The position numbers and the translations under genes were made by a program. The notes under the pieces are model-generated. The model saw nothing but the letters and a program-made list of their open reading frames with translations, made no database searches and was not told the DNA's origin. DNA of 63,871 nt, the filler included, from Pelomyxa schiedti (taxonomy: Eukaryota; Protista; Evosea), in the NCBI GenBank assembly GCA_020536535.1. It is 7 parts of 7 records of this genome, joined end to end, with 100 filler letters (N's around TTAATTAATTAA, not from the genome) between each part and the next. Parts side by side here need not be neighbours in the genome. Positions count along the whole stretch, not along the records: positions 27,383 to 34,233 come from JAHLWZ010001393.1; 6 more parts are not named here. One strand, given 5' to 3'. How positions within the stretch are numbered: the stretch's first letter is position 1; the number at the start of each line of letters is the position of its first letter. Shown piece after piece: positions 1,453 to 34,233 of the stretch.

Positions 1453-4065
1453 ATGGATGCCTTCTATGCAATGGTACAGGTTCAAAGTGAGCCAAAGCAG
1501 ATTCACATCGCCGGTGATGAGGCCAATTTCAGCGGATCGCCGTTGTTAGGAGAACCCGGTTGATAAACGGAAAGCTAGAATCACGATCTGATTTGTTCTT
1601 TAAGGTATTCCCCAAAACACCAAAAGCAAAGTACAGCGATGCGCACATTGTGGCTAGTTGCCGCGCTTGTGGTGGTGGTGGTGTTGGTGATGTTGCCAAT
1701 GACACATTGTGGGTGTGTGACCAGGTCGGATGTGCCAAGTGCGTTTGTTAGTTAGAGGCACACTTACTTGTTAACTCAATTAGTAAACTTACTCTTGTTT
1801 GAAAGTTCCACTCAGTTCATTCGTTGGAGTTCCAGCCCTCCCCCCTCCTGGGATGTACTATGCCTTCTCTGAGCAAAGGACACCACTGTACCTGTGCACG
1901 TCAATGTGGGAGCTGGCAAGTGGAATTGATGTTGTGGACAGCGTCAGCGCAACTGATGGTCCCGGTTGTGCAAGTGGCTCACTTGACTTGCCTGACTTCT
2001 TGAAGTCTCTTGGCGACCAGCAGTTCAACACCTTGTGGGGTTATATCACCTCCGCCAGCGGCTCTGTTGCCGAAGGAGGTTCTTTCCCTTTTCCTACGCC
2101 TATGACTGTTCAGCCAAGTAACAGATGACGGATCAAGTTCTTCGCAGCCCAGCGAATGCATTGATGTGGAATCCTGGCCGGTGGAAGATGATTGGGGAAT
2201 GCTGACCTGGGCTTTGGTGAGGTGGAGAAAAAGTGGTGATTTGAACAGCCCACCTGATTGGGATGACACTGCCGCCGGAAGCTTCAACTGGGCATTGTAC
2301 CCTTCTGTGTATGATCTTTCTCAGATATTCTTTCCTGATGTTTATTTCCCTTCTGACCCGTATGACTACACATGCATTTTCGATGGTGAGTGTTCTTTTC
2401 TCTGTTGTTGAAGCATTGGTTTGGTAATTGTTAATGCCAGGACCTCCGGAAGAATATTTTTGGTTTTACAAACCTCTCTTCGGAGACTGTCTGTGGGTGG
2501 ATAATTCCACTTTCACACCTATTGCCGGGTGGCTTCCGCTCTCTGAGTCTGTGCAATTCTCTCAAAGTCCGGATCTGTTTTCCCAAGCTTGTATGTACAT
2601 TCCTCAGCCATCCAGACTCCGTGGGGAAAGCACGACATTCTTGCTGCGTGTTTGTGACGGGATAGTTCAATGGCCAGAAGAATGGAATTGGGTAGACACT
2701 GACCAGGATCCAATAACTACTTCTGCAAGAAATGAGCAGTTTGATATAAATTTCCCCACGAATTTCAGCGAAGAGCTGCAACAGTTCACTCGACAACACT
2801 CAGGGGAGCAAGGAGTGGATATCGATGGCGCTTCTGTGTTCCTCACTCCGCGGGAGTGTGCCAACTCAGTGAGCGAGTCGAAACTTCCTGATGTTGTTCA
2901 GTNNNNNNNNNNNNNNNNNNNNNNNNNNNNNNNNNNNNNNNNNNNNNNNNNNNNNNNNNNNNNNNNNNNNNNNNNNNNNNNNNNNNNNNNNNNNNNNNNN
3001 NNCAGTTCACTCGACAACACTCAGGGGAGCAAGGAGTGGATATCGATGGCGCTTCTGTGTTCCTCACTCCGCGGGAGTGTGCCAACTCAGTGAGCGAGTC
3101 GAAACTTCCTGATGTTGTTCAGTTCCTCGCGGAATATTATTCGGAACTTGGAATACACACCTGGAGCCAAAGTATTCCGTGGGAGGATAAATCATTCACG
3201 AATTTAATCGGTGTAATTCCTGGCCAATCAGCGGATGCGGCAAAATACCCAGTTGTTATCACTGACCATTATGATGCGGCCTGGTGCGAAAACATCTATG
3301 GTGAGAACGGAACACTGATCGCAACTGACGGCGCAGATGACAACGCTTCAGCCAGTGCCGCGTTGATGATGCTGGCAAAAGTACTGTCAGCAGGAATCAA
3401 ATTCGAAAGAGATATCTGGATTTCCCACCTTGTGGGAGAAGTGTGTGCATACTTGTTTTTACGGCCTCTCCAATCTCATTTGCGAAAAATAGGAGTTCCC
3501 TGCAGATTGCTTGGGAATCAGGTCTCTCGTTTCCTTGATGCTGCAAAAAAAACAAGATGCAACAGCGATCATTGTTTTGGATATGATTGGATACAACAGT
3601 GACGACACCTTCCAGGTATCATTATCCTATTCTTGGTTAAATGGAAAACTAAATGGGGGAAAAAAAAAGGTAAACCCGGGTGATTCTGAGAAGTCCCTGG
3701 CAATTGCCGACGCAATACAGGATGCGGCGGCTCGAGAAGCTTCGAGCCTGACTCTTCTTGTGCAAAAGCGGTGGTATTCCACCAGCTACTTGTATAATAC
3801 TGATGGGATTGCCGCTTCATTGGCCGGATACCCGGTATTTGCTTTATTTTTGTCATCGCAATAGTCCTCACAAGTCCGGTACACACACCACCACCACCAT
3901 CAGGTTGCGCTCGTGAACGAGCACATCAATTATGAGTATGACTTCTGGCGACAGGGATACCACGACAACTATGACACATGCAGCCTCATCGACCCCGATT
4001 ACCACGCGGCAATAGCCAGAACCGTAACAGCCGCTGCTCTGTCACTTGCCTCTCAGCCTCTGTGA
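1453..4065 (+). CDS. M28-family Zn aminopeptidase-like protein, multi-exon, spans an assembly gap
   Basis: Motifs DHYD, GADDNAS, HLVGE|EFPADCLG, LDMIG and YHDNYDT are joined by GT-AG introns. The start codon is uncertain. Confidence 0.85.
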
Positions 4066-4313: not shown

Positions 4314-6673
4314 TCACGATTGTCCTTGAAGGTGGTTCGTGAGTTGGTGTGGTGGACGGCCGCGTGCGCTTTCAGCAAGCTTGTACCACCTCACGGCCTC
4401 CCTGATGTCCCTGCACACTTGCCCTGGTGTCCCTTTGTCATACAGCATGCCCAGCTTCCGGTATGCAAGCTGGCAGCCGAGGGAAGCTGACTGGTGGAAA
4501 AGCCTCAGTGCTTCCTTCTTGTTTTTTGGAACTCGATGGCCTTGGAAGTGGAGCTGCGCCAGCTTCAAGGGAGCCATTCCAATGCCGTTATCTGTTGCAT
4601 TCTTCAGGCATTGTATCCCCTTGTTCATGTCAATGAGCCCAGGAGGTGCTGTTTTAGAATATCTAGCGGCCCCCACGTAGATCAACCCCATGTGAAGCTC
4701 ACTCTCTTTCATTCCCTGTGACAGAGATTTCTGGAAGAAGTGCAACGCTTTTGTGTAGTTGATCTCTGTTCCACACTCACGGAAGTAGTATGAAGAGGCC
4801 ATGGCGTAGTTGTACAGAGGTGCTTCTGATGGGTTATCAAGCATGGAGAACTTCTGAATTGCCTGCTGCACGTTTTCGGTAAAGCCACATTTGCCCCAGA
4901 GAAAGAATTCACCAAGTATCTGGAATGACTCTTGGAGTCCCTGTTCTGCTGATAGATTGAGAAGTCTGGTGATTGTGCGCTTCTCAGTTTCATCAGGATT
5001 TCCCTTTCTGGCCTTAAACAGCTCAATTGCGTATCTCATTTGGCTACGAGGGCGGCCATAGGATGCACTTTTGCACCACTGCTCGAGAGCGCTTTTTACA
5101 CCTTTCTTCATTCCACACCACCCATAATATGAGAATTCACCAGCCAGCTCCAGTGAACGTGCCTTCGTTTCTCCTCCTATTCGGCACCAGAAGTCCTGTA
5201 GCAGTGCGATTCCTCTACCTACTAGAATGCGATATTGATCTGAGCTTTCACACTGCATCATGTAGTGCCACGCAAGGTTGTACTGTGCAGTACGGTAACC
5301 TCCCTTGCAGGAAAGCTGCAGAAGGGTTGCGTCCTGAAGCTTCTTTCCCATGTGATTCGGGGACTTGGGTCACCACCCTTGGACGAAATGCTCATAAACT
5401 CTGCGCTCCTTTCTTTGTTGGTGAATGGAAATTTGCCGTATTTCTCAGAGCAGGCAATAGCCAGCAGGAATGAAGACAGGTTCGAAACCTTGGTGTTGAT
5501 GTCCTTGCAGCCACGCTCCAGAACCTTGATCATCCACTGTTGTGTTTCCAATTGGTATTTCCTGGCTCTGACAAGGAGCTGCTTTCCAAGGTCATAGTCT
5601 CTGGGGGACATGCCAGGGACATTCAGCAATAGGATGTTATCATGGTGATAAAGGCACTGCAACATCAAACAGGAAAAGGCACCAGCCTCTTGCTCGTGGT
5701 ATGCAAGCAATGAAGTACATTTCACAGCAGCAGCATAAAGGTCAAGTTCAGAAAGACTGTGAATTGCTTCAAGTGCCCCCTGGCATGTAATTTCAGCAGT
5801 GGGATCATCCTTCCGTGTCACCACCAGAGCTTTTTGTGTTGGATTGTTGGTCAGACCAGCCTCTCGCAGGAGGGATGACATTATTTTTTTGAACAAGGTG
5901 ATAGTCCATTTAAATCCTTCACTGCTCACTGATGCAGAAGTACCCGCAGAACTACGAGAATTAGTGTTACCCGCAGAACTACGAGAATTAGAATTACCAA
6001 AAATAAAATTTGGCATGGGCTCATGAAAATTAGTAGAATAATTAATATTATATTCTCTGTAACTATTTTCAACGTGTATAATAGATATGTTCCTGTTTTC
6101 AGTGAGTGAACTTCCAAATGCGGCCCTGACCTGCGCCTCAGCCATTTTTACGAAGTCGGCAACGCACGCTTGAACAACTTGTGAGGCTGGTATCATTACA
6201 CCCCCAACGCAAACAAACAACGACCCATCAGGTGGCACCACCAGCCCATCCCGTTCCCCGTCCCCATCACAACAAGACAGCACTTTGAAATAAGGTGCAA
6301 CTGCTGCTGCTTGTGACGTCACCACGGTGCCGGGTAACGAGGAAGCCGAACCAACGTTGTATGTTTGCGGACGGGACTGGGACTGGGACTGGGACTGGGA
6401 CTGGGACTGGGACTGGGACTGGGCACCCGCAAGTGCGGGGGCGCTGGGCCCTTGCGGTGCAAGTGGCGCCCGGTCTTCTTGTACAAGATTCGACGACTGG
6501 GTGGTGGTTGATACTGACGTTTGTCGAGCTGGTCCCGCTGTTGTAATTGTTTGTTGTTGCAGGAGGGGAGGAGCGGGCGACGATGATGATGAGTAGCTTG
6601 TGGGTCGGTGACGTTTTTGTGCGGGCCCATCCGCTGTGTCCCGGTCCTCGTCGTGGTTTGGTTGTACCGACAT
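4314..6673 (-). CDS. SEL1-like repeat protein with a low-complexity N-terminus
   Basis: ORF 4314-5351 has SEL1 repeats (AQYNLAWHY, SELHMGLIY, APLKLAQLHFQG, AYRKLGMLYDKG, EAVRWYKLA). ORF 5258-6742 runs into it in another frame; joining them needs an intron or indel near 5290-5370. Confidence 0.75.
6373..6420. repeat. (GGGACT)8 coding microsatellite (SQ repeat on the minus strand)
   Basis: Direct reading of the sequence. Confidence 0.95.
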
Positions 6674-6899
6674 CTCTTGGTTTTCGCGTCGATGTTCCTT
6701 CCTAGAAGAACCGGGTCTCCAATAGACTCCACGCCACTTCACCTCAAGAGACCGGATCTATTGTTCTATCACAGCCGCAGTGAGGTCGCCGCCTCCAATC
6801 CGCTGATACCGACCTCAATCATTCGATTAACAGGAAAGAGAAAAAGACGAATATTATTATTTGCGATACCTTGTCGTTCCTTGTCATGACAAAACGGTG

Positions 6900-8448
6900 T
6901 CACACCGCAAATAACACAACCACTAATACAAGGTCAGTGAGGAGCGTTCCCACAGTTGAGAATTGGCTCGGTGACCCTGAGATCGACTCTGAGTCACCAG
7001 AGCCAGACACCCTCTGCGTGGATTCTGACTCGGATCCATCGGCCACACTGCTGGTTCTTGTTGTAGCCTCTGAGCTTGTATCGACGATGGATTCACCAGA
7101 ATCTGATGCATCCAACACGCTGTTGGAGTGGGAGGCAGAGCTCGAGGTGGAACTGGAACTGGAGCTGGAGCTTGTGTTATAGATAGTACCGGAGAAGCTC
7201 TTGAATGAGTGGTATGGGTAGTCGGCCCAGCACCCGTAGTAGTATGATTCAATGCCCTCGCCCTCAGGCTGGACAGTGCAGTGCTCACAGGCGCTGTCTG
7301 TGCAAAGCCACGGTACCATCACTCCTTTCTCGTTCCATTCATAGTATCCCCATAGGTTGTTGTTAATTAGTATGCAGTCCGCGTTTGTAAAATATGTTAT
7401 ATCCCATGGAAGCCCTTCACAGTTTGCATTTGGCCATTGGGCCGTCCATGCCGGTCTATGAAAGAAATGTAAGTGACTAAGAAATTTCAAAGCGGAACTC
7501 ACTCCTTTTCAAACCAGGAATCAAGTTTGCTTTCAAACTCAGCAACTGTAATCCAGTAGTGACCGTGGTTCAGTTCCCTACACTGCAGATCCATCGGAAT
7601 AATAACATCCGGTGCGTAGTAATATCCATACACCGAGATCACATCACCGGTACAAGTGTCATCAGTGAAGCTGGCATCCACGGCAACGTAGGTAAAGTCA
7701 CAATCCCCCTCATCGTAGTTACATTCCTCAATATTACACAACCAATCACAGCGTTCATCACCAACCCAGGATTTGAGACACTTGTATGGGCCACAGTATG
7801 TATCATCTATAAAAATACTTTTAGTCAACAAGAAGAAAACAATCAGAGTACCACAGTCAGTTCCATCCCAATCGCAAAGGTCATTGTAACAGTCATTATC
7901 ACAAACCCCATCACCTACTTGTGTATTCAAGCATTCAAAGTTGCAATATCCCTGAAGGGAGTAATTACAGTCACCATCATCCCATTCACAATTGTCATTG
8001 TAACAGTCCTCATCGCATCTCGCATCACCAATTTCGTCCTCCCAGCAACCCAATGAACAGGACTCTAAATGTTCAAATAAAATGAAGCAACTGGTAAGAA
8101 GGAAGCAGTACCAACACAAGCAAGAAGGTCATAGTCACATCCCGCATTGTTACAGTCCCAGTTACAGTCTTCGTCCCCCACAGTAATAGGGTCACATTCT
8201 GGTGCACAGTTGAGGTATACTAAAAACATAATGACTAAGTAAATGTGAAATATAAGGAGGATACTACTCACAGCAGTAACCATTGTCCCACAGGCACTCA
8301 GCACTGGCACATTCCAGGTCACAGTCACGGTTCTCTAGCTCATCTTCAACACAGTTCCAACTACCGCAGTCTGACAAATCACAGTCACCACCATCATATT
8401 CGCAGGCCTCAGTCATACACCATGGGTCACAGTCTCCATCACCAATAA
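6900..8448 (-). CDS. LNR (Lin12/Notch) repeat surface protein with Ser-rich stalk and hydrophobic C-terminus; 5' end lies in the gap
   Basis: At least six C-x3-C..GD..CD..C....C.WD.GDC repeats; intron 7456-7502 (GTGAGT...TAG); terminal LLTDLVLVVVLFAV*. Confidence 0.8.
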
Positions 8449-27382: not shown

Positions 27383-27893
27383 CTTCTTCTTTTGGAAAAG
27401 TCTCCACTTCTGATGTTGATGATGTTGCAGAGGACTTGATCCCCCACAAAACCTTTTTTGTGAGTGTTGAGATGTTCCTGGCACACTCCTGGATCTCAGA
27501 CTCACTGTTTTGCACCGTCAGTGTCTGCCCAAGGAGTTTCTTGCATGCAGAATCTGATTCGTTCAGTTTCATCACCAGTGTGCCTTTCCATTCAGTGAGT
27601 TTCTTCAGGTGTGATGCCAGTTCCTCGTTGGATTCTGTTGCTCTCTGGAGACTGTCATTCACTTTTCTCAGCGATTCCTTGAGCAGGACGAACTGTGGTG
27701 CCAAAATCAGCAACTGAGACTGGAGCAACTTTGCTGCTTCAAAGGCTTCCCTGAACTCAGAATGCGTTGTTGTTCTCACAAGAATCAACATCCTTTCATC
27801 ATCTTCCTGCTTTTTTTGAAGTTGGTCTTGCAGTTGTTGGAGGTTTTTCTTCACTTGGTTGATTTGCTCACACTGGCGCACTTTGTGTTTCAT
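27383..27893 (-). CDS. Coiled-coil protein fragment, truncated by the gap; its 5' end overlaps the motif array
   Basis: Heptad-rich ORF QINQVKKNLQQLQDQLQKK...LASHLKKL. Confidence 0.5.
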
Positions 27894-28340
27894 TGTCTCA
27901 AAGTGCGCCTGAGCAGACATTGAACACAAAGTGCGCCAAATGGGCACTTTGGCGAACCGACTCTGAAAAACCACGTGACACAAAGTGTGCCGCGGCGCAC
28001 TTTGTGTCATGTCACTTTGACGGTGATTTTTTGGATTTACTAAAAATCATGAATAAATGGTGGGAATCGTGTGCCCCCAACGTTTTTTGTGTTGTACACT
28101 GGCTCAAACAACCGAACAACACGTTTTCCAGGTGAACCACAACACTCTACCACCACGAACACAAAGTGCGCCGACCGACCAGCGCACTTTGTGTTTTTTG
28201 ACTGGGCCAACACCGTGACACAAAGTGCGCCATGGTGCCCACTTGGCGCACTTTGTGTCCCGTCAATCGTCAGTCTCAAAGTGCGCTGAGTGGCTGCCGA
28301 TGCCGGGAAACGTGAACTTGTGAGTGTTCTGCTGATTGTC
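27869..28340. repeat. Cluster of ACACAAAGTGCGCC motifs in inverted pairs
   Basis: Ten or more motif copies; hairpins near 27978-28007, 28158-28195 (14-bp perfect stem) and 28218-28259. Confidence 0.9.
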
Positions 28341-28389
28341 GCGCACTCTCTGTGTCAATTTTGGTTCTGTGTTGAGGGGGAGCAGGGCA

Positions 28390-28830
28390 GGAGACAATTG
28401 GTTGGGGGTGGTGGGTGAGGGTGATGCCACTGATTCCAGATCCCATCCATCCCTATCTATGCCATGGAGGTCTCCCAGCAGGGAGCAGAAATTGCAGGCA
28501 TGACACAACACAGACCACCCATCACCCTCAATTGTGTGTCTTTCTCAACTGTTGGCAATGATGTGTGCGTCATGCCTTGTAACTTACAAGGGGGTAACCT
28601 GTCCCACTGGTTTCCTGCTGTTGGGGTGTTTCTGGAGGAAATAGGGTGGTTGTTAATACTCTGGATCTGTTTGATTTCTGATTTCACTCACAGTGTAAGC
28701 TTGGGTTCCTGTGAGGTGACACACAAGAGAACCTTCAGTTCCCTGCAATAGACACACAGTTTGAGTGAATTTTTTTCCACTCCAACACAAAGTGCGCCGA
28801 GGAATGGAAAATCCTGCTGTAAATACAGTG
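28390..28830 (+). repeat. 441-bp inverted duplication, left arm
   Basis: Reverse complement of 32268-32708; I see one C/T difference. Confidence 0.95.
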
Positions 28831-29050
28831 AAGGTTGAGCTCAAGGTTGTGTACTACCTGTTGAAACACAAATGTGTGGTTTAGGGGTGGTGGACTACAT
28901 ACTAAACAAGGATTCGTGTGTGATTGGTTATCTCAGGCAGTTTAGGGGTAGATTCTGTGTCCTTGAGCATAAGTCCCAAAACGAATGGGAGTGAGAGAAG
29001 AAAGATTCTCTTGTTCTTTTGTTGTTTATTAAGGGATACACAGAGAGTTT

Positions 29051-29071
29051 GGGTTAGGGTTAGGGTTAGGG
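29051..29071 (+). repeat. Interstitial telomere-type repeat GGG(TTAGGG)3
   Basis: Direct reading; flanked by a direct repeat of AGGGATACACAGAGAGTTTG. Confidence 0.7.
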
Positions 29072-29748
29072 ATACACAGAGAGTTTGTGGGGTTGGGTTC
29101 AACGGCTGTGATGTTTCAAATCAATTCTCAAGTGTGTATGTAATCAAACATGTGGCACAATAAACAACAGTTGGAACCAGGAGAACGAATGGAGAGATCA
29201 ACAGGCAGATCAGTGAATTGCAGGAACATTTCTAAGGCTGGTTCTCCATACAATATCAACCAACACCGCAAAAACACCGGAACTATGTACCTCTTGTCAT
29301 GAGGTACAGAGCCGTACTACTGGCAACAATGGGAACGAACACCAGAGGGAGAACGAAGCCAATCAAGAGTAGATTTGTTTTCTGTGAAGGTGAACTGAGG
29401 AATTCCGAATTTGGGAAGAGGGCTGGTTCTCCCTCCCACAGCAACCGAACAACGCACCGACAACGGGAATATGTACCCATTGTTATGGGGCATACAATGA
29501 CACCACTGCCAACAGTGGGAACCAACACCAGACCGAGAACAAGACCCATCAAAAAATTGATTTGTATCCAAAAAAAAATCGATGTGGTTCTTGCTGCTGT
29601 GTGGTCACACCGCACAGTGAGTGGTGTGGTTTGGTGTGTTGTGCAAAGGGGTCTCCAGTCTGGTGGTATTTGTGCCAAACAGTTGCTGGGGGGCCAATAA
29701 CGATGACCCTTTTCATCGGCACGAATCACCAAATTACTTGTCAACCAG

Positions 29749-29950
29749 TGCACCGCGGCGCACTTTGTGTTTTGGAAGAGGACTTTTCACGTGACCCAAA
29801 GTGCGCCAGTGGGACACTGGCGCAGATGTGCGAAAATCGGCGCACTTTGGGTTTCGATTTCTCGGAAAAAAAAAAACACCCAAAAAATGGTTGGCGCACT
29901 TTGTGTTTTACAGAGCAATTTTCCTGTGGTTCAAAGTGCGCCACCGTGCA
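29749..29950. mobile_element. MITE-like non-autonomous element (202 bp)
   Basis: 19-bp TIRs TGCACCGCGGCGCACTTTG / CAAAGTGCGCCACCGTGCA (17/19 match), flanked by CCAG on both sides, with internal AAAGTGCGCC motifs. Confidence 0.7.
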
Positions 29951-29954
29951 CCAG

Positions 29955-30354
29955 TTATGACTTCCACAAAGTACACGAACTCAGCCTTCTCGCGAGGCTC
30001 TGAAGTCTGGTGCACTTTAGTGGGATTGGAGAGACTGAGGACTGAGCCGAATCTGGACTATTACCAGAATGAGACAGCGAAGGTAATGATCAGCACACAG
30101 CGCAGCTGGGTGCACAAATACAGCAACAACAACGCAGCATGCGGTTTTGATTACATGCACACTTGTCCGAGAATCCATTTGAACATCGCAGCCTTTTAAC
30201 CCAATCGCACAACCACTCTGCAAGATTTTACACACTCCCTTTTTATCCCTTTACACAACAACAACGAGAACAAACAAGAGAACACTTTATTCTCTTCACT
30301 CTCACTCGTTTTCTTCCTCTGTGGGGCTTATTCTCGAGCCCACAGAAGCTAACA
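29955..30354 (+). mobile_element. LTR copy 1 (5' end diverged), followed by the degenerate PBS-like TGCTGGAGATGC
   Basis: Aligns to 31323-31724 and 32741-33139; ends GAAGCTAACA. Confidence 0.8.
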
Positions 30355-30914
30355 GTTTCACGTGCTGGAGATGCACTTCCTTTTGGTTGTTCGTTGTTGT
30401 TGTTTGTGCTGCCATGGTCCATTACATGATGGGCAGGCACACACCTTGGGCCGAGGATGAGTTTCAATGACAGGTGGTACGCTCTCGATTGGTGTTGCAA
30501 TCGTCGGCCCAAGTGCGAAGGCAATCCATGGAAACATCATCGTGGCCACGTTGTTGCCACTGTGGCACGCCACATGATCGGCACCACTGCTGTCTTGCAT
30601 CTTCGGTTATGTTTGGCAGTGGACGAACAGAGTGCAATGTCAGGCTTTCCACCCACTTCACCTCGGCACTGACACCCCTTACTCTTGCTCTCTCACTCCT
30701 GCTGTGCACCCACACACCACTCCACTGGCTCCCACCTCTACACATGATTACCGGAAAGGCAGCGACGACCTGTTCAGGTGTGAGTGCTGGACCTGTTTTG
30801 AGTTGAGAGGGAACACAAGGGAAAGTGGAGGCTCCAGCGAGGGTTGGAGGGTGATGAGAAGTTCATTGGGATGCCTTGTGTGTGGTCTCAGCTCTCTGAG
30901 TTGCTCCCTCAGGC

Positions 30915-31915
30915 TCAACAAGCCATCGTGGAGTTGAGCCTTTCCAAGGCAACTTTATCATCAATATCACCTGCCTCTTGTGGTGGTAGCCAGCACATTT
31001 GTGCTGAAAAGATACCACACACACACACCTCAATCAGCTGGCAGTGTTCAAACTGTGATGATCCCATTTGATGTTTCACTCCTGGATGACTCGCACCTTG
31101 AAACATGTTGTTGTTGTTGAGGGTGCCCTTCAGTTTGAATGATGATGGCGATGATGACGATGACAGTGTTGCAACACCCTCACCACCACGGCACCCTTTT
31201 TGGGTGAATGTGCCTTCAAACATGTCACCGTTTGGCCACCTTCTCGTCCCCTTTGTTGGAACACCACCCTCCCACAACCCAGTGAACAATGATCCATCCC
31301 TGCTCCACGTCTTGGTTCCTTCTGTGTACTTCCACAAAGTACACGAACTTGGCCTTGCTCGCGAGGCTCTGAAGTCTGGCGCGCTTTAGCGGGATTGGAG
31401 AGACTGAGGACTGAGCCGAATCTGGACTATTACCAGAATGAGACAGCGAAGGTAATGATCAGCGCACAGCGCAGCTGGGCGCACAAATACAGCAACAAGA
31501 ACGTGGCAGGCAGTTTTGATTACATGCACACTTGTCCGAGAATCCATTTGAACATTGCAGCCTTTTAACCCAATCGCACAACCGCTCTGCGAGATTTTAC
31601 ACACTTCCTTTTTACCCCCTTCACAACAACGACAAGAACAAACAAGAGAACACTCTTTATTCTCTTCACTCTCACTCGTTTTCTTCCTCTGTGGGACTTA
31701 TTCTCGAGCCCACAGAAGCTAACACTTCACCGTGCTCCTTCCCCTGCACCCACTGGCCATCATACCTGTCACCGTTTGCCCACAGCCTCACACCCTGACC
31801 ATGGAACACGTTATCCTTCCACTCACCAACATAACTCCCTCCTCCAGCACCAAACAGGATACTCCCTGTTCCACATTTCTTGCTGTGATCGATTTGACCA
31901 TGGTAGATGTCACCC
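30915..31915 (-). pseudogene. MORN-repeat gene disrupted by a solo LTR
   Basis: Removing the LTR and one TSD restores YVGEWKDNVFHGQGVRLWANGDRYDGQWVQGKEHGEGTKTWSRDGSLFTGLWEGG...WPNGDMFEGTF. Confidence 0.85.
31323..31724 (+). mobile_element. Solo LTR (402 bp) with 4-bp TSD CTTC
   Basis: TGTGTACTTC...GAAGCTAACA termini; CTTC at 31319-31322 and at 31725-31728. Confidence 0.88.
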
Positions 31916-32189
31916 TAAGAAGTGATCGGCAAAAGTCCAAAGGGTGAAAAATGCATCGGAGCGCGGGTTTGCGGTGGTTGTTGCCGTCGAGGCGTCTGTG
32001 TTTGTTGCCAGTGGGTGCAGGGGAAGGAGAATGGTGAAGGAACAAAGACATTCATGATTTGCTCTCTGTTCCTGAGAACGAAAAACTTGATTACAGAGCC
32101 CAACTCCAATTGTGGGAAGTGTTGGTTCCCACTGAAACTCACAGTGGCCACCCTGGGTAGTTGAATCCACCAAACACAGCCTGGTTAAC

Positions 32190-32310
32190 TTGTGGCGCAC
32201 CTTGAACCACAGGGTTTTGACTGGAACACAAAGTGCGCCACTTGGGTTCCTAGTGGCGCACTTCCGACACTGTATTTACAGCAGGATTTTCCATTCCTCG
32301 GCACACTTTG
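32190..32310. repeat. AAAGTGCGCC motif cluster, homologous to the right end of the 29749 MITE (inverted)
   Basis: GTGGCGCACCTTGAACCACAGG...AACACAAAGTGCGCC matches the reverse complement of 29890-29945. Confidence 0.75.
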
Positions 32311-32708
32311 TGTTGGAGTGGAAAAAAATTCACTCAAACTGTGTGTCTATTGCAGGGAACTGAAGGTTCTCTTGTGTGTCACCTCACAGGAACCCAAGCT
32401 TACACTGTGAGTGAAATCAGAAATCAAACAGATCCAGAGTATTAACAACCACCCTATTTCCTCCAGAAACACCCCAACAGCAGGAAACCAGTGGGACAGG
32501 TTACCCCCTTGTAAGTTACAAGGCATGACGCACACATCATTGCCAACAGTTGAGAAAGACACACAATTGAGGGTGATGGGTGGTCTGTGTTGTGTCATGC
32601 CTGCAATTTCTGCTCCCTGCTGGGAGACCTCCATGGCATAGATAGGGATGGATGGGATCTGGAATCAGTGGCATCACCCTCACCCACCACCCCCAACCAA
32701 TTGTCTCC
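32268..32708 (-). repeat. 441-bp inverted duplication, right arm
   Basis: Reverse complement of 28390-28830. Confidence 0.95.
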
Positions 32709-32740
32709 CCCCCCCCGCTCCCCCTCACCAAACACCCAAC

Positions 32741-34233
32741 TGTGTACTTCCACAAAGTACACGAACTCGGCCTTGCTCGCGAGGCTCTGAAGTCTGGCGC
32801 GCTTTAGCGGGATTGGAGAGACTGAGGACTGAGCCGAATCTGGACTATTACCAGAATGAGACAGCGAAGGTAATGATCAGCGCACAGCGCAGCTGGGCGC
32901 ACAAATACAGCAATAAGAACGCGGCAGGCGGTTTTGATCACATGCACACTTGTCCGAGAATCCATTTGAACATCGCAGCCTTTTAACCCAATCGCACAAC
33001 CGCTCTGCGAGATTTTACACACTCCCTTTTTACCCCCTTACAACAACAACGACCAAACAAGAGAACCCTCTTTATTCTCTTCACTCTCACTCGTTTTCTT
33101 CCTCTGTGGGACTTATTCTCGAGCCCACAGAAGCTAACAAATTGGTGGAGGATGCATCACGTTCTCCGTGGCTCGTATCCAAACACTACGCAACATCGAA
33201 ACTCGTAACTCACTCGTAACTCGTAACTCGAACTGAACCGATTACACCCGATCTCCGATGCTTCGATTTTACTTGGGACCTTGCGTAAACCTACGAGGAC
33301 ACACCTCGTAACTCGAACCGAAACTCCGACGATTACACCCGATCTCCGATGCTTCGATTTTACTCGTGGACCTTACGTAAACCTACGAGGACACTACGGC
33401 ACACTAACGACACCGTACTTCGTTCGGCAGACATTAACCCAATTGCCAGATACTACCCGCGGCACTAATTCACATCACTAACCCTTATCTTTCCGATCAC
33501 CACGATGATTCGATGTTTTCGAGACTCTCACGAAGACTCTTATCGACCTCCAAATCGTTTCCTTTCTCATCTGTCAACGCACAGTTTGGCCCTGGACCAA
33601 GAACTACCCACAGAATATAACTCAGCCCCAAGTCAGGCCTGATCATGCTCCAAGACTCAGAGAGCTGTCACCACGCCACATACATATATGATAACTACTA
33701 TGTTCCTACTATGCACTGTACCTGTACGTGGAATACTCACGATCACGATCCATTACTACCGACACGACCTGCTTCACTGGCAACGAGTACGACAACACCG
33801 TCTGCGTTGAACAACCCGTTCTTTCTCGACATCGACATCGACATCGACGATGAAGGACCCGTCGGCATCGTCCCACCAACCAACCATCAATCAGATTTCC
33901 TTCAAGGAAGAATGAAAAAATTCGATTCGATTTGCTTGATTTATGAAAGATCTTCAATCTCTTACTTCGCGGTACTGAGACGAGCATAGTGGAGTCAGGA
34001 GAGACATGCGGAAATGCTGGAAAGCAGCCGCAAACCAGCGGAAGTCATACGGCAATGCACGGGCATGCAAATCCCACGGCAAAGATAAATACAGCAAGCT
34101 GGCATCATGGATGCCAAGCCCTCAAGGAACCAGAACTGGCAAGCCTGGAATCTGCACTGAGATTAGGATCAGTGATTCCACAACCAGAACCAACCTTACA
34201 GCACAACGGCCAGCGCTTCTGGAGAGTCTAATT
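32741..34233 (+). mobile_element. 5' LTR (32741-33139), PBS (33143-33155) and degenerate internal region of an LTR retroelement, truncated by the gap
   Basis: The TG...CA LTR is followed after 3 nt by TGGTGGAGGATGC. Tandemly duplicated leader at about 33195-33410; internal ORFs are broken by stops; no RT or integrase is visible. Confidence 0.8.

What the first reader, a model, noticed from the sequence alone, without database searches (positions are those of the whole stretch)
29961..33139. Repeat copies diverge mainly by CpG-to-TpG/CpA transitions, suggesting cytosine methylation of transposons
Seen: in the first ~270 bp, LTR copy 1 versus copy 3 differs at about 13 substitutions by my manual count, and 9 are CpG-to-TpG/CpA (e.g. 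GGCGCGC>GGTGCAC, TAGCGG>TAGTGG, TGCGAG>TGCAAG). Copy 2 shows about 4 of 7. The single difference between the 441-bp inverted arms is also GCG>GTG. Knowledge: this bias is the footprint of 5mC deamination, and the model amoebozoans Dictyostelium and Entamoeba have only Dnmt2-type enzymes and little 5mC. Inference: this lineage may have CpG-targeted repeat silencing or a RIP-like mutator.
Basis: partly seen in the sequence, partly recalled or inferred. Interest (0 to 1): 0.75.

Follow-up and report, generated by a model that had tools for sequence, protein, structure and literature searches.

The report
CpG decay in Pelomyxa repeats
Repeated DNA in the anaerobic amoeba Pelomyxa schiedti loses CpG sites about ten times faster than other sites mutate, the usual footprint of cytosine methylation; this is unreported for Pelomyxa but expected from its relatives, and it is not confined to transposons.

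Summary
The piece comes from Pelomyxa schiedti (Archamoebae). It holds three about 400-bp LTR copies: A 29960-30354, B 31323-31724, C 32741-33139. Polarised by majority rule, the three copies show 13 CpG losses on 44 CpG positions, 1 gain on 55 TpG/CpA positions, and 6 other transitions on 298 positions.

The bias generalises. In 13 independent repeat pairs (8.3 kb, six contigs), CpG transitions run 10.1 times faster than other transitions (bootstrap 7.9-16; neutral simulation 1.07). There is no 5' neighbour preference and no CpA effect, and CpG divergence scales with neutral divergence. Gene paralogues show the bias as strongly as transposons. CpG o/e is 0.49-0.64 on all five contigs analysed, with TpG/CpA excess.

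Deamination of 5-methylcytosine at CpG is the best explanation (about 0.7). A RIP-like mutator is unlikely, and transposon-specific targeting is not shown. I could not search Pelomyxa for a DNMT gene. A published table lists four DNMT1-family genes in the related archamoeba Mastigamoeba, and Acanthamoeba methylates young retrotransposons. The public Pelomyxa reads come from amplified DNA and cannot show 5mC. Verdict: a new member of a known kind, of moderate interest.

The parts
29960..30354 (+). LTR copy A: the oldest and most decayed copy, lacking the first 5 bases (TGTGT). It carries 9 private CpG>TpG/CpA changes, 3 other transitions and 2 clear transversions (a third scored change lies at the cut 5' end and is an alignment artefact).
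31323..31724 (+). LTR copy B: a solo LTR (TGTGT...AACA) inserted in a MORN-repeat exon on the minus strand. The 4-bp target-site duplication CTTC lies at 31319-31322 and 31725-31728. It carries 4 private CpG transitions out of 6 substitutions.
   Evidence: Alignment. The empty site in paralogue L001 4320-4323 aligns to both flanks with a 4-bp overlap.
32741..33139 (+). LTR copy C: closest to the ancestral state, with 0 private CpG changes and CpG o/e about 0.94. It is followed 3 nt downstream by a PBS-like TGGTGGAGGATGC (33143), so it may be the 5' LTR of an element that runs off the piece.
   Evidence: The PBS reading is from the sequence only; no matching tRNA was found.
28376..28830 (+). 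Left arm of the 455-nt inverted repeat, CpG o/e 0.11.
32268..32722 (-). Right arm of the inverted repeat. The only core difference from the left arm is a CpG transition inside the motif CACAAAGTGCGCC.
31726..31914 (-). MORN-repeat exon fragment upstream (in gene sense) of the LTR-B insertion.
   Evidence: Pfam MORN E = 9e-12; 84% DNA identity to L001 4115-4323.
31017..31322 (-). The same MORN gene continuing on the other side of LTR-B. It is 96% identical to paralogue L001 4320-4625.
27383..27920 (-). Coiled-coil ORF cut by the piece edge. It belongs to the Pelomyxa RING/MORN paralogue family and identifies the organism.
   Evidence: 81-88% identity to Pelo_17945, Pelo_1142 and Pelo_9450; DNA paralogues on L001, L002 and L004.
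33140..34233 (+). Sequence downstream of LTR-C. It is the only part of the sample that is not CpG-depleted (o/e 1.19; TpG 1.06, CpA 1.05). It has no Pfam or Rfam match and may be the young internal or leader region of the element.

Best explanation
The piece is a transposon-riddled paralogue of a RING/MORN gene in Pelomyxa schiedti. Three independent insertions of one LTR family (A oldest, B a solo LTR, C youngest) have aged in place.

As they aged they lost CpG dinucleotides by C>T transitions on either strand, about ten times faster than other sites change. The most likely cause is spontaneous deamination of 5-methylcytosine laid down by a CpG-specific, flank-independent (DNMT1-type) methylation system. 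That system is active now or was active until very recently.

Shown: the spectrum, its direction, its generality across repeats and gene paralogues, and CpG depletion in everything sampled.

Inferred: that methylation is the cause, and which enzyme does it.

The data do not show that methylation is aimed at transposons in particular.
For: - Organism: proteins and DNA match the P. schiedti assembly GCA_020536535.1.
- Direction: 13 CpG losses against 1 gain in the LTR triple, and two CpGs hit independently in A and B.
- Magnitude: 118 C/T differences before G (394 conserved CpG cytosines) against 106 before A/C/T (3298 conserved). The corrected rate ratio is 10.1 (bootstrap 7.9-16). A context-free simulation on the same sequences gives 1.07, maximum 2.3.
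- Consistency: all 11 pairs with any non-CpG C/T difference to compare against show a ratio of 5.6-31.
- Flank-independent: the A, C, G and T 5' neighbours give 0.20-0.26, p = 0.69; CpA, CpC and CpT are all about 0.03.
- Clock-like: CpG divergence of 4%, 18%, 23% and 53% tracks non-CpG divergence of 0.5%, 2.6%, 4.2% and 7.8%.
- Composition: CpG o/e is 0.49-0.64 on the five contigs analysed, with TpG and CpA at 1.2-1.6.
- Relatives: Mastigamoeba balamuthi has 4 DNMT1-family genes (PMC12344493 Table S1). Acanthamoeba has CpG methylation concentrated on young LTR and LINE copies.
Against: - No DNMT gene and no 5mC measurement exist for Pelomyxa. I could not query its proteome for one.
- The best-known archamoeba, Entamoeba, has only DNMT2.
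- CpG o/e of about 0.5-0.6 is higher than the roughly 0.2 expected at equilibrium under a uniform 10-fold rate. Methylation would therefore have to be partial, patchy or recent.
- The roughly 47-kb sample was reached through paralogues and a retrotransposon, so it is biased towards repeat-rich contigs.
- One 1.1-kb stretch (33140-34233) keeps its full CpG content.
Confidence: 0.7

Rival explanations
1. Methylation-independent CpG mutability. An intrinsic context bias of damage, replication or repair in a genome without 5mC produces both the CpG transitions and the CpG depletion.
For: No DNMT or 5mC has been shown for Pelomyxa. Entamoeba has only DNMT2. From my own knowledge, some genomes without 5mC are CpG-depleted, and yeast mutation-accumulation lines show a modest CpG excess.
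Against: The corrected ratio of 10.1 (7.9-16) is what heavily methylated CpGs show. To my knowledge it is far above the 1-3 fold reported for unmethylated genomes. The effect is strictly CpG, symmetric on both strands and flank-independent. The related archamoeba Mastigamoeba encodes DNMT1-family genes.
Confidence: 0.15
2. A RIP-like, repeat-induced mutator deaminates cytosines in duplicated DNA during some life-cycle stage.
For: All the evidence for hypermutation comes from duplicated sequences, which are the only ones that can be compared. In fungi a DNMT-like enzyme drives such a process.
Against: There is no CpA preference and no TpCpG preference. CpG divergence rises in proportion to neutral divergence rather than in bursts. 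Young duplicates keep their CpGs: the L003 LTR pair has 0 of 18 changed, the 888-bp L004 duplication 4 of 94, and LTR-C 0. Annotated genes outside the obvious families are also CpG-depleted. DNMT4/RID appears confined to fungi (PMC12344493).
Confidence: 0.06
3. An artefact of single-cell whole-genome amplification, co-assembly of seven cells, or collapsed repeats.
For: The assembly was built from GenomiPhi-amplified single cells with SPAdes --sc (PMC8887013). Amplification chimeras could explain odd structures such as the 455-nt inverted repeat.
Against: Polymerase errors or damage would not be CpG-specific and would not reach 3-15% divergence in a consensus. The pattern recurs on six contigs and in every informative pair. 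The LTR-B insertion has a clean 4-bp target duplication and an empty paralogous site.
Confidence: 0.03

Closest known systems
CpG methylation of young LTR/LINE retrotransposons and silent genes in Acanthamoeba castellanii (DNMT1 + DNMT3; PMC12344493)
   Same: It is an amoebozoan with CpG-only methylation and retrotransposons as prominent targets. It is the expected source of CpG>TpG decay in ageing copies.
   Different: There 5mC was measured directly (EM-seq, WGBS, nanopore), is sparse (1.3% of CpGs) and is confined to about 3.4% of the genome. Here nothing is measured, and the decay and CpG depletion appear in everything sampled, genes included. That would imply broader or heavier methylation.
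DNMT1-family genes of Mastigamoeba balamuthi (4 copies, no DNMT3/5; Table S1 of PMC12344493)
   Same: It is another free-living archamoeba and a close relative of Pelomyxa. It supplies a plausible enzyme for flank-independent CpG methylation.
   Different: This is only a gene count in a supplementary table. I found no methylome and no paper discussing it. Pelomyxa is not in the table.
Age-dependent CpG decay of LTRs, Alu and L1 in vertebrate genomes
   Same: The signature matches: a roughly 10-fold CpG transition excess, losses far exceeding gains, young copies CpG-rich and old copies CpG-poor, and genome-wide CpG depletion with TpG/CpA excess.
   Different: The lineage and toolkit differ. CpG o/e here (about 0.5-0.6) is less extreme than in mammals (about 0.2).
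Repeat-induced point mutation (RIP) of fungi
   Same: C>T transitions accumulate in duplicated DNA.
   Different: RIP prefers CpA (Neurospora) or TpCpG (some basidiomycetes) and acts in bursts on fresh duplicates. Here the target is any CpG, the accumulation is clock-like, and young duplicates are intact.
Hypermethylated Tp1 LTR-retrotransposon clusters of Physarum polycephalum (from my own knowledge of 1980s-1991 literature; not checked here)
   Same: It is an amoebozoan with methylated, nested LTR-element DNA.
   Different: It belongs to a different class (Myxogastria), and its methylation was shown by restriction analysis. No link to Pelomyxa was tested.

Membership tests
5mC-driven CpG decay (CpG methylation footprint) | Transitions at CpG are several-fold faster than at other sites. 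| tested here: met
   The corrected ratio is 10.1 (bootstrap 7.9-16) over 13 independent pairs. Neutral simulation gives 1.07. The LTR pairs give p = 4e-7 to 9e-4.
5mC-driven CpG decay (CpG methylation footprint) | Directionality: CpG losses far exceed CpG gains. | tested here: met
   LTR triple: 13 losses on 44 sites against 1 gain on 55 sites. L001 triple: 5 on 56 against 3 on 135.
5mC-driven CpG decay (CpG methylation footprint) | CpG depletion with reciprocal TpG/CpA excess. | tested here: met
   CpG o/e is 0.49-0.64, with TpG and CpA at 1.2-1.6, on five contigs (about 47 kb). GpC is about 0.83-0.98.
5mC-driven CpG decay (CpG methylation footprint) | A DNA cytosine-5 methyltransferase (DNMT1/3/5 type) is encoded in the genome. 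| not testable with these tools
Only indirect evidence exists: 4 DNMT1-family genes in Mastigamoeba.
5mC-driven CpG decay (CpG methylation footprint) | 5mC is physically present on the DNA. | not testable with these tools
   The public reads come from GenomiPhi-amplified DNA, which carries no methylation.
Transposon-targeted methylation (genome defence) | The effect is stronger in transposons than in genes or unique DNA. | tested here: not met
   Gene-paralogue pairs give ratios of 8.8-31 and transposon pairs 5.6-10.8. Genes have CpG o/e 0.13-0.72. The sample is small and repeat-biased, so this is a weak test.
RIP-like mutator | Dinucleotide or trinucleotide preference typical of RIP (CpA, or TpCpG). 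| tested here: not met
   C/T differences per C: CpA 0.027, CpC 0.032, CpT 0.037, CpG 0.23. The 5' neighbour has no effect, p = 0.69.
RIP-like mutator | Burst-like mutation of fresh duplicates. | tested here: not met
   CpG divergence is proportional to non-CpG divergence. Duplicates of 97.9-99.5% identity keep nearly all their CpGs.
LTR retrotransposon (identity of the repeat) | TG...CA termini and a short target-site duplication. | tested here: met
   The termini are TGTGT...AACA. Copy B has the 4-bp duplication CTTC, with an empty site in paralogue L001.
LTR retrotransposon (identity of the repeat) | A primer-binding site next to the 5' LTR and an internal gag-pol. | tested here: inconclusive
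   TGGTGGAGGATGC lies 3 nt after copy C. No tRNA was available to match it, and no gag or pol domain was found in the 1.1 kb before the piece ends.

The most novel reading that the evidence does not exclude
Pelomyxa schiedti, a free-living anaerobic archamoeba, carries dense CpG methylation over genes as well as repeats. A DNMT1-only toolkit like that of Mastigamoeba maintains it. 5mC would then be ancestral to Archamoebae and lost on the way to parasitic Entamoeba. A CpG-rich young LTR family (copy C and its 1.1-kb leader, o/e 0.94-1.2) either escapes methylation or has only just invaded.
Probability: 0.3. Interest if true: 0.55.

Novelty: new member of a known kind. Interest (0 to 1): 0.38.

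Why it matters
The only Pelomyxa genome was built from amplified single-cell DNA, which erases methylation. The substitution spectrum of its repeats is therefore the only evidence available on 5mC in this organism. That spectrum predicts CpG methylation in a lineage whose textbook member, Entamoeba, has only Dnmt2.

If confirmed, 5mC would be placed in the free-living archamoebal ancestor, and its loss would be dated to the Entamoeba branch. It would also add an amoebozoan with apparently much broader CpG methylation than Acanthamoeba. It is not a new mechanism: the signature, the likely enzyme family and its role on retrotransposons are all known elsewhere.

Tried and rejected
- A megablast of the LTR against phage records found nothing, as expected for a eukaryote.
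- To collect more LTR copies I searched with an ORF read through the LTR; no protein shares words with it.
- A search with a Pelomyxa gag-protease ORF returned only two proteins, so the repeat sample stayed small.
- Walking along a contig with a single-exon chromodomain ORF added only 1.5 kb.
- No tRNA in five loci to test the primer-binding site. TRF reported no tandem repeats. No Rfam family. No Pfam domain in the ORFs downstream of LTR-C.
- No homology between the flanks of the three LTR copies, so they are separate insertions and not one duplicated block.
- Literature: no paper links Pelomyxa, Archamoebae or Mastigamoeba with 5mC. One search was badly set and returned only mammalian DNMT1 papers. 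The supplement of PMC11244446 does not list these taxa.
- My first pooled statistic (differences divided by conserved C) was biased about 2-fold, because changes arising in the abundant TpG also count. I replaced it with a corrected estimate and a neutral simulation (one search timed out).
- I did not search the Pelomyxa proteome for DNMT.
Full report
WHAT IS THERE

The piece (27383-34233) belongs to Pelomyxa schiedti, a free-living anaerobic archamoeba. A coiled-coil ORF at its left edge is 81-88% identical to three P. schiedti proteins. Several stretches are 84-96% identical at DNA level to contigs of assembly GCA_020536535.1.

The piece holds three direct copies of an about 400-bp repeat with TGTGT...AACA ends:
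- A, 29960-30354, has lost its first five bases.
- B, 31323-31724, is a solo LTR inside a MORN-repeat exon on the minus strand (Pfam MORN, E = 9e-12).
- C, 32741-33139, is followed 3 nt later by a primer-binding-site-like TGGTGGAGGATGC.

A paralogous gene on L001 shows the uninterrupted site. The two flanks of B align to it with a 4-bp overlap, so B has a target-site duplication CTTC. The flanks of A, B and C are unrelated, so these are three separate insertions.

A 455-nt inverted repeat (28376-28830 and 32268-32722) brackets A and B. The host gene is broken up: its MORN part and its coiled-coil part lie 254 bp apart in L001 but about 3.1 kb apart here.

CHECKING THE OBSERVATION

A and C differ at 13 substitutions in the first 270 columns, and 9 are CpG>TpG or CpG>CpA. 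B has 4 such changes among 6 private substitutions. The only difference in the 441-bp core of the inverted repeat is GTGCGCC versus GTGTGCC.

Polarising each difference by the majority of the three copies gives:
- 13 CpG losses on 44 CpG positions
- 1 CpG gain on 55 TpG/CpA positions
- 6 other transitions on 298 positions

Two CpGs decayed independently, to CpA in A and to TpG in B. That rules out the reverse direction.

By lineage, A has 9 CpG losses, B has 4 and C has none. This fits A as the oldest copy and C as the youngest. CpG o/e rises accordingly: 0.68 in A, 0.83 in B and 0.94 in C.

DOES IT GENERALISE?

I fetched about 41 kb of non-overlapping sequence from five further P. schiedti contigs (re-fetched one of them with 1.5 kb more). 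From these I took 13 non-overlapping repeat pairs of at least 83% identity, 8.3 kb aligned in all. They include:
- retrotransposon gag-protease copies
- the LTR pair of a chromodomain gypsy element
- a 2.2-kb and a 0.9-kb segmental duplication
- paralogues of the RING/MORN family

C/T differences number 118 before G (394 conserved CpG cytosines) and 106 before A, C or T (3298 conserved). The naive ratio is inflated, because T>C changes in the abundant TpG also count. I therefore subtracted that expectation. The corrected CpG to non-CpG transition rate ratio is 10.1, with a bootstrap range over pairs of 7.9-16. A context-free simulation on the same sequences gives 1.07, maximum 2.3.

All 11 pairs with any non-CpG C/T difference to compare against show a ratio of 5.6-31. 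The 5' neighbour of the CpG has no effect (0.20-0.26 for A, C, G and T; p = 0.69). CpA, CpC and CpT are alike at 0.027-0.037. CpG divergence rises with non-CpG divergence: 4% at 0.5%, 18% at 2.6%, 23% at 4.2% and 53% at 7.8%.

COMPOSITION

CpG o/e is 0.62 for the piece and 0.49-0.64 for the other contigs. TpG and CpA stand at 1.2-1.6 and GpC at about 0.83-0.98. Annotated genes lie at 0.13-0.72, and the inverted repeat at 0.11.

The single exception is 33140-34233, downstream of LTR-C. Its CpG o/e is 1.19 and it has no TpG/CpA excess.

WHAT IT MOST LIKELY MEANS

A strictly CpG-specific, strand-symmetric, flank-independent, directional and clock-like tenfold excess of transitions, together with CpG depletion and TpG/CpA excess, is the established footprint of 5-methylcytosine deamination. 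This is general knowledge from vertebrate repeats. I put about 0.7 on CpG methylation by a DNMT1-type system that is active in Pelomyxa now or was until very recently. The youngest comparisons still show the bias: the inverted-repeat arms, and the 2%-diverged L004 duplication.

The enzyme is inferred, not shown. Table S1 of PMC12344493 lists four DNMT1-family genes and no DNMT2, 3 or 5 in Mastigamoeba balamuthi, another free-living archamoeba. It lists only DNMT2 in Entamoeba and none in Dictyostelium. It lists DNMT1-family genes in Acanthamoeba, Vermamoeba, Arcella and Amoeba proteus. In Acanthamoeba, measured 5mC is CpG-only and enriched on young LTR and LINE copies and on silent genes.

Nothing shows that transposons are the particular target. 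Gene paralogues and segmental duplications carry the same bias or a stronger one, and genes are CpG-depleted. This test is weak, because my sample was reached through paralogues and a retrotransposon and is repeat-biased.

A RIP-like mutator is unlikely, for these reasons:
- There is no CpA or TpCpG preference.
- Accumulation is proportional rather than burst-like.
- Young duplicates keep intact CpGs: the L003 LTR pair has 0 of 18 changed, L004 has 4 of 94, and LTR-C has none.

A methylation-free CpG bias cannot be excluded without a DNMT gene or a methylome. However, to my knowledge a tenfold effect is well beyond what unmethylated genomes show.

Amplification or assembly artefacts cannot produce CpG-specific divergence of 3-15% on six contigs. 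They could still account for odd structures such as the inverted repeat, because the genome was assembled from GenomiPhi-amplified single cells (PMC8887013).

OPEN POINTS

An o/e of 0.5-0.6 is milder than the equilibrium expected under a uniform tenfold rate, and values range from 0.11 to 1.19. Methylation, if present, is probably uneven.

LTR-C has four private non-CpG changes and no CpG change. About three CpG changes would be expected if it had aged like the others. That hints that its differences arose in an active, unmethylated master lineage, but the numbers are too small to be sure.

I could not search the Pelomyxa proteome for DNMTs, and public reads cannot reveal 5mC. Both steps are listed as decisive.

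NOVELTY

I found no paper on cytosine methylation in Pelomyxa, Mastigamoeba or Archamoebae. The prediction is therefore new for this lineage. The phenomenon, its likely enzyme family and its association with retrotransposons are well known, including within Amoebozoa. I rate it a new member of a known kind, with moderate interest.

Noticed in passing
window 27875-28257, 29757-29905, 32227-32312: The 13-mer CACAAAGTGCGCC (at most 1 mismatch) occurs 16 times in the piece, against 0.01 expected. Most copies form inverted pairs making short palindromes. It is absent from about 41 kb of other Pelomyxa loci. Region 27920-28265 folds as a nested hairpin (DNA, z = -8.2), like a foldback or MITE-type element. 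Two variants are CpG>TpG.
   Followed up: partly
window 33140-34233: This is the only stretch not CpG-depleted (o/e 1.19, no TpG/CpA excess) in the roughly 47 kb sampled. It is non-coding by Pfam and has a 35-bp exact duplicate spaced 91 bp apart (33239 and 33330). It may be the leader of a young element starting at LTR-C, or DNA that escapes methylation.
   Followed up: partly
window 29051-29070: An internal (TTAGGG)3 telomere-type repeat lies between two copies of GGGATACACAGAGAGTTTG.
   Followed up: no
window 28376-28830 and 32268-32722: These 455-nt inverted arms are 99.8% identical in their core and have an extremely low CpG o/e (0.11). The genome was assembled from amplified single cells, so an amplification or assembly chimera is possible. 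No other copy was found in the fetched loci.
   Followed up: partly
window 27383-27920 and 30918-31914; L001 50-1070 and 3618-6221; L002 215-1172; L004 4036-8204; L005 2253-5701: An expanded Pelomyxa gene family combines MORN repeats, a coiled coil and a C3HC4 RING finger. Paralogues lie on at least five contigs, often next to retrotransposons. The window copy is disrupted by about 3.1 kb of inserted repeats and by solo LTR-B.
   Followed up: partly
L003 2247-7611: This looks like a complete young gypsy/chromovirus-type element. Its 220-bp LTRs are 99.5% identical, and it has protease, RT-RNaseH and chromodomain ORFs. A 93%-identical partial copy lies on L002.
   Followed up: partly
L001 1-2169 and 5126-7323: A 2.2-kb segmental duplication (91.6% identity) includes a RING gene. 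A nested triple repeat of about 750 bp lies at 1269-2014, 2270-3044 and 6430-7180.
   Followed up: partly
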